Shown: positions 29,920-32,900 of the stretch, in pieces
Layout of the letters: each line of letters opens with the position of its first letter
How positions within the stretch are numbered: the first letter of the stretch is position 1
Assembly (NCBI GenBank): GCA_002269645.1
Contig: NIVC01002259.1
Location: 124,001-188,000, forward strand
Origin: Macrostomum lignano
Taxonomy: Eukaryota
DNA length: 64,000 nt
Direction: 5' to 3'
The notes under the pieces: generated by a model
Databases searched by the model: none
What the model was told of the DNA's origin: nothing
What the model saw: the letters and a program-made list of their open reading frames with translations, nothing else
Position numbers and translations under genes: made by a program

Positions 29920-32900
29920 ATGTCCAGCATGCGCAGGTCCGTCAGCGCCTACCGCACGTTGGACGGTGTCGCCGATCCCTCGCCCGACGTTGGCCAATGG
30001 CGCCGGTCGCTGCGAGCCCTGGACCCAGGTTTTCCGCTTTGACTAATTAGTCCCTATGTATAAATATAAGTATATTTCCGGACTATAAAACTCAACTGTG
30101 TCGGTTTTTAGACGCCAACAAAAAGCTGAGCTACTCTGGCGATTTGTTTAAACCGCGCGATTTCACCCAAAGGTGATCATTAAGGCGATTCTGTTTATTC
30201 AAATTTTCAATATTCTAGAATGCATTCATATTTTAAGCAACAAACAATGCCATCCTTCAATTTACTATAGAAAGAAACCTGGCGACCTGTCAGTCACGGC
30301 AGCTCTGGAAAGGGAGTACACCCTGGCTTTGCAGCAGCAGATTCGCCTGCTTGAAATTGAAAACGGCGACTTATATCCTTTTTTCAGTTCGTTTAAAACA
30401 AAATCAAGAAAGAACAGGGGGTCTTTAGTCGTTAGGATTTCAGATTGTATAGTAATTACGCTCGTATATTTAATGATTTCTTTCACTAAAAAGAAAGATG
30501 GGTATTAAGAGAGGGTTGTAGCCTAGTGCTTAGAGCGTCGGACTCACGACTTGAAGGTCGGGGGTTCGATTCCCGATCCTACTGGAAAAATGTGTGGCCT
30601 TGATCAAGACACTTAACTTTGCATTGCTTCAGTTCACCCAGCTGTAAAATGGGTGCCAGCATTAGCTGGGGTAACTCAGGGTTTGTGTGGCGACCCCCCA
30701 GTCCTTGGACTGAACAGCCGTACTCAGCCTTCAGATGCTGCGGCTGAGCTGTCGGTCGCACATCTGCCCATCAATCAATGCATTCCTTAACTCAGCTACT
30801 CGCACAATCAACGCGCTCAAGAGTGCTGGAATCCTCCGCCAGCCAGCAGCAGCGCGAGGCGCCGGAGCCTGCCAACGACCGCCTGCTGCAGGAGCTGAAG
30901 GCTCTGGAGAAGAAGATGGACGATCTGCAGGCTGACAGCGCGCGCAAGGACGCCGCCGCCGACGAGCTGCAGCGGCGAGTCATCTACCTGGCCTCCAGGC
31001 TGGCCGATCGCGAGGAAGAGGAGGCCGGTGCTCGCGAAGATGCCACCGCCGCTGCCGCAGCTGTTCGCGCCGAGGAGGAGGAGCTTCTGACGCGTCAGCG
31101 GGAGCGGGACGAACTCCGGCTGCGCGTGGCCGCACTGCGGCGTCGGGTAGCCCAGCTGGAGGGTCTCGATGGGGAGGCCCGACTGTATGATGACCGGGCG
31201 CGAACCCTGCGGAGTGAGTGCTTTCGGCTGATTGTCCGGCTGACTGACTGACTGACTGACTGACTGACTGACTGACTGACTGACTGACTGACTGACTGAC
31301 TGACTGACTGACTGACTGACTGACTGACTGACTGACTGACTGACTGACATAACCCTAACCCTAGCCCCCCACTAAAGCCGCCAACGCACCACCTTCTACC
31401 CCTCCTGTCTGGCAGCCCAGCTGAATTCTGCGCTCTCAAAACTGGCCGCCACCGGCGCAGCCGTCAGCTCCGAACGAGCCGCCGTCGCCCGCCTGGAAGC
31501 CGAGGTTCGCCGGCTGGAGCGCCAGATGGCAAGTCTCGCCGGCCTTGGCGACGATTCAGCAACGTTGTCTGCCACGGCCCGCCTGCTGCGCGAAGAGAAT
31601 CGCCGTCTGAGGCGGCGAACAAAATCTGCATCAGGCACCGCCTACGTCCGAGCTGAGGACCTGGCCGCCCTGGCCAACCGCAACGCTGCCCTGGAGGCTG
31701 CCGTGCGCCGGCTTGAAGCGGAGCTGGCGCCGCGCTCGTCGACGACTGCAGGCGCCGAAGAGGTGGCCCGACTGAGGGAGCGGGAACGGCAGCTGGAGCA
31801 GCAGGTGCGATGGTTTGTTAGGGGCCAGATTGCATTACTGTAAGAGGTTTTGTTTGCGCAAAAGCTATTTTTAGAAATGACGTCATAGACGTGATTTCAT
31901 TAGTAATCTATTTTTAGAAATGACGTCATACACATGACTTGATTGATACCATTAGTACTCTATTGTAAAAATGACGTCATACACATGACTTGATTGATAC
32001 CATTAGTACTCTATTGTAAAAATGACGTCACGCAAATAATTCGACTAAAATAAGTAGTAATATTCTATTTTTAGAAGTGACGTCAGGCAGACGCTTACAT
32101 ACCTGTACATTTAATAAATCTTTAATAAATTTGTTATGCTTAAATCAGCTTGTATTAGCAGTATGGTTAGTAGGAAAGACTTTAAAGTCGAATTTATTGC
32201 TATTTTCTACAAAGCGATGTGACCTTCAACTGTTCAGGCCGACCTCACGGCGCGCGAGGCCTCCGAGCTGACCCGCCGGCTGGCCCAGCTCGAGGCCGAT
32301 GGGGCGGCCGGCGGAGTGACGGAGCTGACCCGCCACTGCCGCCAGCTGCAGCGGGACAATGCTCAGCTGGCCAGGCAGGTGCGCGGGCTGGAGGCCGAGC
32401 TGGAAAGGAAGAGGGCGGAGAAGGCAACCGTCAGTGCGGCCGTGGAGAGCTCGGAGGTTCGGCTCAGTCAGCTGCAGGCTGAGCTCAGCAAGCTGCAGGA
32501 GCTGCAGGTCTGTCTGTCTGTCTGTCTGTCTGTCTGTCTGTCTGTCTGTCTGTCTGTCTGTCTGTCTGTCTGTCTGTCTGTCTGTCTGTCTGTCTGTCTG
32601 TCTGTCTGTCTGTCTGTCTGTCTGTCTGTCTGTATGTCTGTCTGTCTGTCCACCCAGTCCCACTGAGAGTCTGAGAGTCTGAGAGTCCACCCAGTCCCAC
32701 CGACAGTCTGAGAGTCCACCCAGTCCCACCGAGAGTCTGAGAGTCCACCCAGTCCCACCGAGAGTCTGAGAGTCCACCCAGTCCCACCGAGAGTCTGAGA
32801 GTCCACCCAGTCCCACCGAGAGTCTGAGATCCCACCCAGTCCCAACGAGAGTCTGAGAGCCCACCCAGTCCCAACGAGAGTCTGAGAGTCCACCCAGTCC

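What the first reader, a model, noticed from the sequence alone, without database searches (positions are those of the whole stretch)
30373..30812. AT-AC minor-spliceosome intron, with a full SINE inside it, in an uncharacterised coiled-coil gene
Seen: exon 3 (…RLLEIENGDL) has no GT donor but ends at ATATCCTTTT. About 410 nt later lies TTCCTTAAC, then an AC (30811-12) that rejoins the frame as ENGDL|RSRVLES. Known: RTATCCTT and TTCCTTAAC are the U12 5' site and branch-point consensus; AT-AC introns are rare and have been lost in several animal lineages. Inference: this genome keeps a working minor spliceosome and this gene depends on it. A SINE fills about 60% of the intron and ends ~15 nt before the branch point. 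Two out-of-frame ACs (30798-99, 30804-05) lie nearer the branch point than the in-frame one (~22 nt), so alternative AC use could give unproductive isoforms.
Basis: partly seen in the sequence, partly recalled or inferred. Interest (0 to 1): 0.75.

Follow-up and report, generated by a model that had tools for sequence, protein, structure and literature searches.

The report
Ancient AT-AC minor intron in flatworm gene
This is a genuine minor-spliceosome (U12-type, AT-AC) intron in a coiled-coil gene of the flatworm Macrostomum lignano, at a position kept as a U12-type intron from sea anemone to toad; it is an ordinary member of a known class, with an unusually long gap between branch site and 3' splice site.

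Summary
ATATCCTTTT starts at 30373, TTCCTTAAC lies at 30783-30791, and AC at 30811-12 closes a 440-nt phase-2 intron.

The window is Macrostomum lignano (GCA_002269645.1). A 7-exon model using this AT-AC junction translates exactly to the deposited protein PAA59471.1, and that annotation was built only from RNA data. An intronless 1460-nt contig of a 71% identical homologue reads ENGHL|RSK across the same junction. Three further genomic copies carry identical intron ends.

The same codon holds a U12-type intron in an old M. lignano paralogue, an annelid, a starfish, a hemichordate and a toad (all AT-AC), and in Nematostella (GT-AG, U12-type).

Three corrections or additions:
- The gene belongs to a conserved, unnamed metazoan family.
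- The SINE (30512-30771, tRNA-like head) has a complete 5' end but lacks an internal 13-nt block and the 3' tail seen in other copies.
- The branch-site-to-3'ss distance is 22 nt here and 36 nt in the paralogue, against 10-15 nt in the five other species. This is unexplained.

snRNA genes and junction read counts could not be checked.

The parts
29914..33414 (+). Coiled-coil gene BOX15_Mlig007651g1 (PAA59471.1). It has 7 coding exons: 29914-30028, 30112-30172, 30271-30372, 30813-31213, 31416-31804, 32238-32507 and 33289-33414.
   Evidence: The model translates exactly to P0001, 487 aa plus stop. The locus was identified. No Pfam family is above threshold.
30271..30372 (+). Exon 3 (102 nt), ending ...GAA AAC GGC GAC TT.
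30373..30812 (+). Intron 3: a U12-type AT-AC intron, 440 nt, phase 2.
   Evidence: The other five introns of the gene are GT-AG.
30373..30382 (+). U12-type 5' splice site ATATCCTTTT.
   Evidence: It is the only ATATCCTT in the window on either strand. The published consensus is ATATCCTT at +1 to +8 (PMC2831892).
30512..30771 (+). tRNA-derived SINE copy in sense orientation. The tRNA-like head is at 30512-30581. The copy lacks a 13-nt internal block and the family's 3' tail.
   Evidence: Rfam tRNA 29.2 bits.
30783..30791 (+). U12-type branch-point sequence TTCCTTAAC. The candidate branch adenosines are 30789 and 30790.
   Evidence: It is one of only two TTCCTTRAY matches in the window and the only TTCCTTAAC. 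The published consensus is TCCTTAAC (PMC2831892).
30798..30805 (+). Two nearer, out-of-frame AC dinucleotides: 30798-99 and 30804-05, which lie 9 and 15 nt from A30790.
   Evidence: Using them would add 13 or 7 nt and shift the frame (my calculation).
30811..30812 (+). 3' splice site AC, 22 nt from A30790.
30813..31213 (+). Exon 4 (401 nt), starting G CGC TCA AGA.
12059..12327 (-). Second copy of the same SINE family, with a full 5' end, a 3' tail and an 11-nt target-site duplication (TAGTAGTGTCA / TAATAGTGTCA).
52340..52570 (+). Third copy of the SINE family, truncated at the 5' end.

Best explanation
Positions 30373-30812 are a U12-type (minor-spliceosome) AT-AC intron of a Macrostomum lignano coiled-coil gene.

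Shown here:
- The intron has a perfect U12 5' site and a perfect U12 branch motif.
- It is absent from the RNA-derived gene product at exactly 30372|30813.
- It occupies a position that has held a U12-type intron since before cnidarians and bilaterians split.

Inferred from the established mechanism of the class:
- The U11/U12 di-snRNP binds ATATCCTT (U11) and TTCCTTAAC (U12, bulging a branch adenosine at 30789 or 30790).
- U4atac/U6atac.U5 then joins.
- The AC at 30811-12 is used as the 3' site.

The tRNA-derived SINE landed in the unconstrained middle of the intron, between the 5' site and the branch motif. This happened before the recent genome duplication, because all four gene copies carry it. 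It is passenger DNA that leaves both signals intact.

One feature is unusual. The branch motif lies 22 nt from the 3' site, longer than in the orthologous introns elsewhere.
For: 1. Exact motifs and coordinates.
2. The 7-exon model using this junction equals PAA59471.1 residue for residue. The GenBank annotation of this assembly was built only from RNA-seq and transcriptome alignments with STAR, BLAT, StringTie/TACO and TransDecoder (PMC5730564).
3. An intronless 1460-nt contig (L001, SRR28338163) encodes a 71% identical homologue and reads GAG AAC GGG CAT CTG CGT TCA across the junction. The four-protein alignment is gapless at that point.
4. Three other genomic copies on separate contigs have the same AT, branch motif and AC. 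They differ inside the intron by indels of 1 nt (twice) and 13 nt, which would break a reading frame.
5. Of 104 frame-keeping GT/GC-AG or AT-AC pairs, only this one gives the known protein.
6. The orthologous intron has the same codon and the same phase in six other genes:
   - M. lignano paralogue: ATATCCTTCT...TTCCTTGAC...AC
   - Owenia: ATATCCTCTA...TCCTTAAC...AC
   - Patiria: ATATCCTTTG...TTCCTTGAC...AC
   - Ptychodera: ATATCCTTTT...TTCCTTGAC...AC
   - Bufo: ATATCCTTTC...TTCCTTAAT...AC
   - Nematostella: GTATCCTTTA...TTCCTTGAC...AG
7. A further AT-AC U12-type intron lies in a neighbouring, unrelated ZDHHC9-like gene of the same genome.
8. Schistosomes have a full set of minor snRNAs and minor introns (PMC2770079; PMC10639083).
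Against: - The distance from the branch motif to the 3' site (22 nt from A30790) is well beyond the 11-13 nt optimum reported for U12-type introns (PMC3584512). It also exceeds the 10-15 nt seen in the five orthologous introns from other phyla.
- Two ACs lie closer to the motif.
- No junction reads were seen directly. The protein identity leaves a formal 1-nt ambiguity, because TTG and TTA both encode Leu.
- No U11, U12, U4atac or U6atac gene could be sought in the genome. Only about 100 kb of it was in hand, and that held none.
Confidence: 0.9

Rival explanations
1. The intron is U12-type, but the spliceosome mostly uses the nearer ACs (30798-99 or 30804-05). That would give frameshifted mRNAs that are degraded, so the in-frame 30812 product is only a fraction. 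In this reading the long spacing acts as a built-in damper on expression.
For: The nearer ACs lie 9 and 15 nt from the branch adenosine, close to the reported 11-13 nt optimum. U12-type 3' site choice is described as error-prone (PMC3584512). The positions are confirmed.
Against: - The RNA-derived annotation of all gene copies gives the in-frame product.
- The old paralogue uses an AC 36 nt from its branch motif and has no AC at 10-20 nt at all. Distant 3' sites are therefore evidently used in this species.
- No read counts are available either way.
Confidence: 0.15
2. The branch motif TTCCTTAAC was brought in by the 3' end of the SINE and replaced an older branch site. This would explain the odd spacing.
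For: A weak resemblance exists between the sequence after the SINE body in the intron copy and in the copy at 52 kb, which share AGCTACT at a similar offset. A degenerate TTCTTTCAC lies 25 nt upstream of the SINE.
Against: - The tail similarities of the intron copy to the other copies are not significant: 113-183 of 2000 shuffles do as well.
- The real family tail (GGGCAGGTGnAAT, shared by two copies, 5 of 2000 shuffles) is absent from the intron copy.
- Homology to three copies stops at 30771, 12 nt before the motif.
- The SINE-free paralogue also has long spacing.
Confidence: 0.05
3. The region is removed by the major spliceosome through cryptic GT-AG sites (for example donor 30452 GTAATT with acceptor AG at 30794-95, last intron base 30795), or it is partly coding.
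For: The frame stays open for 44 codons past 30372, and several in-frame GT-AG pairs exist.
Against: - None of these pairs gives the deposited protein or the gapless match to the homologue.
- A 1-nt indel between gene copies lies inside the would-be coding extension.
- The 5' site is a perfect U12 consensus and unlike a U2-type AT-AC site.
Confidence: 0.02
4. The AT and AC termini are assembly or sequencing errors, or the locus is a pseudogene.
For: None found.
Against: - The termini are identical in four contigs.
- The reading frame is intact and expressed.
- The same termini occur in orthologues from four other phyla.
Confidence: 0.01

Closest known systems
Canonical AT-AC U12-type introns (the class defined by ATATCCTT / TCCTTAAC / AC; reviewed in PMC3584512 and PMC2831892)
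   Same: It has a perfect 5' site and a perfect branch motif, AT-AC termini and no polypyrimidine tract. It is a non-zero-phase intron, a single U12-type intron among GT-AG neighbours, and its position is deeply conserved.
   Different: The branch motif is 22 nt from the 3' site (36 nt in the paralogue), against the usual optimum of 11-13 nt. The host gene has no amniote match among the 76 proteins found, so it would not appear in lists based on human genes.
Minor splicing in Schistosoma (PMC2770079; PMC10639083)
   Same: Same phylum. The published minor snRNAs and minor introns show that flatworms kept the system.
   Different: Macrostomum is a distant, free-living, early-branching flatworm. 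I found no paper that mentions minor introns in it. No snRNA evidence was obtained here.
U12-type GT-AG intron at the same position in Nematostella vectensis (L007 2035-2404)
   Same: Same codon, same phase, and the same U12-type 5' site and branch motifs.
   Different: Its termini are GT-AG rather than AT-AC, so the subtype switched on one branch. Its branch motif is 11 nt from the 3' site.
tRNA-derived SINEs (for example the tRNA-Gln-derived SINE reported for S. mansoni in PMC2770079)
   Same: It has a tRNA-like head with a B-box-like GGTTCGATTCC, is about 260-300 nt long, occurs as dispersed copies, and one copy has a target-site duplication.
   Different: The family was not matched to any named SINE here. 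The intron copy has no detectable target-site duplication and no family tail.

Membership tests
U12-type (minor-spliceosome) intron, AT-AC subtype | Extended 5' splice site ATATCCTT at +1 to +8 | tested here: met
   ATATCCTTTT at 30373-30382; consensus from PMC2831892.
U12-type (minor-spliceosome) intron, AT-AC subtype | Branch-point sequence TCCTTAAC near the 3' end | tested here: met
   TTCCTTAAC at 30783-30791. It is one of only two TTCCTTRAY matches in the window and the only TTCCTTAAC.
U12-type (minor-spliceosome) intron, AT-AC subtype | Short distance from branch site to 3' splice site (optimum 11-13 nt) | tested here: not met
   The distance is 22 nt from A30790 to 30812. That lies inside the -55 to -5 region scanned by intronIC, but outside the optimum and outside the 10-15 nt of five orthologues.
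U12-type (minor-spliceosome) intron, AT-AC subtype | AT-AC terminal dinucleotides and no polypyrimidine tract before the 3' site | tested here: met
   The ends are AT at 30373-74 and AC at 30811-12. The last 20 nt, CAGCTACTCGCACAATCAAC, are not pyrimidine-rich.
U12-type (minor-spliceosome) intron, AT-AC subtype | Removed from mRNA at exactly these borders | tested here: met
   This is indirect but strong. There is an exact match to the RNA-derived protein and to the intronless homologue contig. No reads were seen directly.
U12-type (minor-spliceosome) intron, AT-AC subtype | Orthologous position occupied by U12-type introns in other species | tested here: met
   Owenia, Patiria, Ptychodera, Bufo, Nematostella and an old paralogue.
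U12-type (minor-spliceosome) intron, AT-AC subtype | Splicing depends on U11, U12, U4atac and U6atac snRNPs present in the genome | not testable with these tools
   The whole genome is not searchable here. The roughly 100 kb in hand held no snRNA gene.
U2-type AT-AC intron | 5' site resembles the major-class consensus apart from A at +1 (PMC1557818) | tested here: not met
   ATATCCTTTT is the U12 consensus, not a U2-like site.
tRNA-derived SINE | tRNA-like 5' head with internal promoter boxes | tested here: met
   Rfam tRNA 29.2 bits over model positions 1-71, at 30512-30581, including GGTTCGATTCC.
tRNA-derived SINE | Multiple dispersed, non-coding copies of a few hundred bases | tested here: met
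   There are four independent copies in about 80 kb: window 30512, 12059-12327(-) and 52340-52570(+), and L006 9652-9850(-). Identity is 81-87%.
tRNA-derived SINE | Target-site duplication and a family 3' tail | tested here: inconclusive
   The 12-kb copy has an 11-nt duplication and a tail. The intron copy has neither.

The most novel reading that the evidence does not exclude
The minor spliceosome of Macrostomum lignano may select 3' splice sites far downstream of the branch motif. The distances are 22 nt here, 36 nt in the paralogue, and 16 or 22 nt in a ZDHHC9-like gene. The orthologous introns of an annelid, a starfish, a hemichordate, a toad and a sea anemone keep 10-15 nt. This would mean either that the distance rule for U12-type 3' site choice is relaxed or altered in this lineage, or that non-consensus branch sites are used while the consensus motif only recruits U12.
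Probability: 0.3. Interest if true: 0.55.

Novelty: new member of a known kind. Interest (0 to 1): 0.3.

Why it matters
- It shows, from sequence and public RNA-derived annotation, that an early-branching free-living flatworm model still uses minor splicing. I found no paper reporting this for Macrostomum.
- It adds a deeply conserved U12-type intron, shared by cnidarians and bilaterians, in an unnamed coiled-coil family. The family has no amniote match among the proteins found, so lists based on human genes would miss it.
- The long spacing between branch motif and 3' site in all three M. lignano U12-type introns seen is a small, testable lead on how the minor spliceosome picks its 3' site.
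- The class itself, its conservation and transposon passengers in introns are all well known.

Tried and rejected
- ARAGORN found no tRNA in the window. The SINE head is detected only by the Rfam tRNA model, just at threshold.
- Pfam gave no family for the protein.
- The paper search for 'minor intron' plus 'Macrostomum' found nothing. Supplements of PMC10639083 held no species table, and PMC11347168 and PMC2846911 do not mention flatworms.
- The primary papers on branch-to-3' site distance (PMC86782, PMC60238, PMC1370826) are not held, so the distance optimum is cited from the review PMC3584512 only.
- I looked for evidence that the SINE carries the branch motif. The tail similarities were not significant, and nhmmer found no further copies.
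- I looked for RNA structure that would bring the distant AC closer to the branch site. No fold was better than shuffles.
- The last protein search, meant to fetch the annotated ZDHHC9-like protein of M. lignano, returned nothing. Its 3' site was therefore judged only by gapless alignment to human ZDHHC9.
- The look-up of the Lingula orthologue found no record.
- The minus-strand GTATCCTT matches at 12244, 42246 and 56117 have no branch motif downstream. One of them lies inside a SINE, and their number is what chance predicts.

Full report
**Observation.** The sequence is as described.
- Exon 3 ends ...GAA AAC GGC GAC TT at 30372.
- The next bases are ATATCCTTTT (30373-30382).
- TTCCTTAAC lies at 30783-30791, and AC at 30811-12 precedes G CGC TCA AGA.
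- The intron is 440 nt and phase 2, and the join reads ENGDL|RSRVLES.
- The two nearer ACs (30798-99, 30804-05) exist and would add 13 or 7 nt, which is out of frame.

Motif counts alone are not special in 64 kb. RTATCCTT occurs 4 times against 4.08 expected, and TTCCTTRAY 2 times against 2.81 expected. What is special is the placement. The only ATATCCTT sits exactly where coding homology stops. One of the only two TTCCTTRAY matches in the window sits 21 nt before coding homology resumes.

**Where the window comes from and what the gene is.** A protein search with my exon model returned a 100% identical protein, PAA59471.1 (BOX15_Mlig007651g1, Macrostomum lignano). It is encoded on NIVC01002259.1 of GCA_002269645.1.

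A seven-exon model translates to that protein residue for residue. Its exons are 29914-30028, 30112-30172, 30271-30372, 30813-31213, 31416-31804, 32238-32507 and 33289-33414. The other five introns are GT-AG.

The GenBank annotation of this assembly was made only from RNA evidence: STAR mapping of RNA-seq, BLAT of a de novo transcriptome, StringTie/TACO and TransDecoder (PMC5730564). The exact match is therefore indirect RNA support for the junction 30372|30813. Pfam finds no family.

**Independent support for the junction.**
- A 71% identical homologue (P0002) is encoded without any intron on a 1460-nt contig assembled from run SRR28338163. This is most simply a transcript. It reads GAG AAC GGG CAT CTG CGT TCA (ENGHL RS) across the site, and the alignment is gapless there.
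- Three further genomic copies of the gene on separate contigs (g3, and g4 twice) have identical AT, branch motif and AC. They differ inside the intron by two 1-nt indels and one 13-nt indel, as expected for non-coding sequence. This rules out assembly error.
- I enumerated all frame-keeping GT/GC-AG and AT-AC pairs around the site. Of the 104 pairs, only 30373-30812 gives the known protein.

**Conservation.** A profile search found an old M. lignano paralogue (P0005) and orthologues of about 490-560 aa. They share EAEYIKNLQQQIYFLELEANYLR[ED]QA.KAT near the N-terminus and W[SE]EFEK[ML]A near the C-terminus. A second search showed the family in cnidarians, echinoderms, a hemichordate, molluscs, annelids, a brachiopod, nemerteans, bryozoans, a tunicate, amphibians and a gar. 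All carry only automatic names, and no amniote is among the 76 hits.

I fetched six of the genes and located the junction. In every one an intron splits the same Leu codon after its second base, and in every one it is U12-type.

| Gene | 5' site | Branch motif | 3' end | Branch A to 3' site |
|---|---|---|---|---|
| M. lignano paralogue (L006 5854-6214) | ATATCCTTCT | TTCCTTGAC | AC | 36 nt |
| Owenia fusiformis | ATATCCTCTA | TCCTTAAC | AC | 10 nt |
| Patiria miniata | ATATCCTTTG | TTCCTTGAC | AC | 15 nt |
| Ptychodera flava | ATATCCTTTT | TTCCTTGAC | AC | 11 nt |
| Bufo gargarizans | ATATCCTTTC | TTCCTTAAT | AC | 14 nt |
| Nematostella vectensis | GTATCCTTTA | TTCCTTGAC | AG | 11 nt |

The intron is thus an ancient U12-type intron, older than the split between cnidarians and bilaterians.

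**The unusual point.** In the window the distance from the second A of the motif (30790) to the last intron base is 22 nt, and in the paralogue it is 36 nt. The five other species have 10-15 nt. The review literature gives an optimum of 11-13 nt and calls U12-type 3' site choice error-prone (PMC3584512).

The paralogue has no AC at all at 10-20 nt, so a distant AC must be used there.

A scan of the M. lignano DNA in hand found a third AT-AC U12-type intron by chance, in a ZDHHC9-like gene next to the paralogue. It starts at L006 134 (ACAAG|ATATCCTTTG), its TTCCTTAAC is at 210-218, and ACs lie 16 and 22 nt from the branch A. The distal AC gives a gapless alignment to human ZDHHC9 (86.1 bits). 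The proximal AC needs a 2-residue gap (81.4 bits).

So all three M. lignano introns exceed the spacing of all five orthologues from other phyla. This is a small sample, and two of the three are paralogous. No RNA fold better than shuffles bridges the gap. I record this as unexplained. It is the basis of the novel case.

**The SINE.** Rfam's tRNA model matches 30512-30581 at 29.2 bits, against a threshold of 29, with a degenerate cloverleaf and GGTTCGATTCC.

Three independent copies exist in the DNA at hand: window 12059-12327(-), window 52340-52570(+) and L006 9652-9850(-), at 81-87% identity. Homology of all three to the intron copy ends at about 30771, so the element is about 260 nt (59% of the intron) and stops 12 nt before the branch motif.

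The intron copy starts at the family's 5' end. It lacks a 13-nt block (GCGCCGCGCAATA) present in all three other copies. It also lacks the 3' tail GGGCAGGTGnAAT shared by the 12-kb and L006 copies (5 of 2000 shuffles do as well). Only the 12-kb copy shows a target-site duplication.

I tested whether the branch motif could be SINE-derived. The tail resemblances of the intron copy are not significant (113-183 of 2000 shuffles). All four recent gene copies carry the SINE and the old paralogue does not, so the insertion predates the recent duplication.

**Mechanism.** By analogy with the established pathway for this class (PMC3584512), the steps are as follows. These steps are inferred; none was tested here.
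1. U11 pairs with ATATCCTT.
2. U12 pairs with TTCCTTAAC, bulging a branch adenosine.
3. The two bind together as a di-snRNP.
4. U4atac/U6atac.U5 then joins.
5. The AC at 30811-12 is ligated to exon 4.

Minor snRNAs are published for Schistosoma (PMC2770079), and minor introns for that genus (PMC10639083). I found no paper on minor splicing in Macrostomum. I could not search the genome for the snRNAs, and the roughly 100 kb in hand contains none.

**Verdict.** The intron is a new, well-documented member of a known class. Its deep conservation is typical of that class, and the SINE is a passenger. The modest new points are these:
- Minor splicing is inferred in an early-branching flatworm model.
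- A U12-type intron is conserved in an unnamed metazoan gene family.
- The spacing between branch motif and 3' site is unusually long in this species.

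Noticed in passing
L006 134-233 or 134-239 (M. lignano NIVC01002305.1): A further AT-AC U12-type intron lies in an unrelated ZDHHC9-like palmitoyltransferase gene. It reads ACAAG|ATATCCTTTG, with TTCCTTAAC at 210-218. Two in-frame ACs lie 16 and 22 nt from the branch A. The distal one aligns without a gap to human ZDHHC9.
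   Followed up: partly
L006 5854-6214: The old M. lignano paralogue (P0005) has the orthologous AT-AC intron without a SINE. Its branch motif is 36 nt from the 3' site, and there is no AC at 10-20 nt.
   Followed up: yes
L009 4179-4283 and 5453-5545 (Owenia fusiformis): There are two tandem versions of the exon before the U12-type intron. Each is preceded by a U2-type 3' site and followed by ATATCCT, but only one U12 branch motif and AC lies downstream (5859). This layout is expected to make the two exons mutually exclusive, through incompatibility of the two spliceosomes.
   Followed up: partly
L009 1-221 and L010 1-164: In both Owenia and Ptychodera the orthologue lies head to head with VPS11, which is conserved microsynteny. 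In the M. lignano window the neighbours are different.
   Followed up: no
window 32508-32650 and 31240-31348: A (GTCT)36 microsatellite begins at the very first base of intron 6, so the GT donor is part of the repeat. A (CTGA)27 array sits 27 nt into intron 4 and is followed by TAACCCTAACCCTAGCC, which looks like telomere repeats.
   Followed up: no
window 32673-33269 and 31898-32059: A 29-nt minisatellite (20.6 copies) fills most of intron 6, and a 51-nt repeat (about 3 copies) lies in intron 5.
   Followed up: no
window 23361-24992; 34851-35375(-); from about 36890 to the window end: The neighbouring genes are a GC-rich C2H2 zinc-finger ORF (544 aa open frame), a 174-aa gene on the minus strand, and a large polycystin-1-like gene (PLAT, PKD_channel domains) that runs past the end of the locus held.
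   Followed up: no
window about 25000-27300, 35700-36350, 37300-39700, 43000-44000: Long minisatellite arrays are open in two or three reading frames at once, which gives many long spurious ORFs.
   Followed up: no
window 12237-12244 (-): The SINE copy at 12 kb reads GTATCCTT where the intron copy reads GTGGCCTT, so a point variant of this SINE creates a U12-like 5' site. No branch motif follows it, and I treat it as chance.
   Followed up: partly
L006 9652-9850 (-): Another copy of the same SINE family lies antisense in the last intron of the paralogue. The family is frequent: four independent copies in about 80 kb.
   Followed up: partly
A 180-aa query built from exons of the M. lignano ZDHHC9-like gene found no protein at all in the 5.8-billion-protein collection. 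Yet a 410-aa product with a DHHC domain is listed for that gene in L006. Either my downstream exons are wrong or that protein is not indexed.
   Followed up: no
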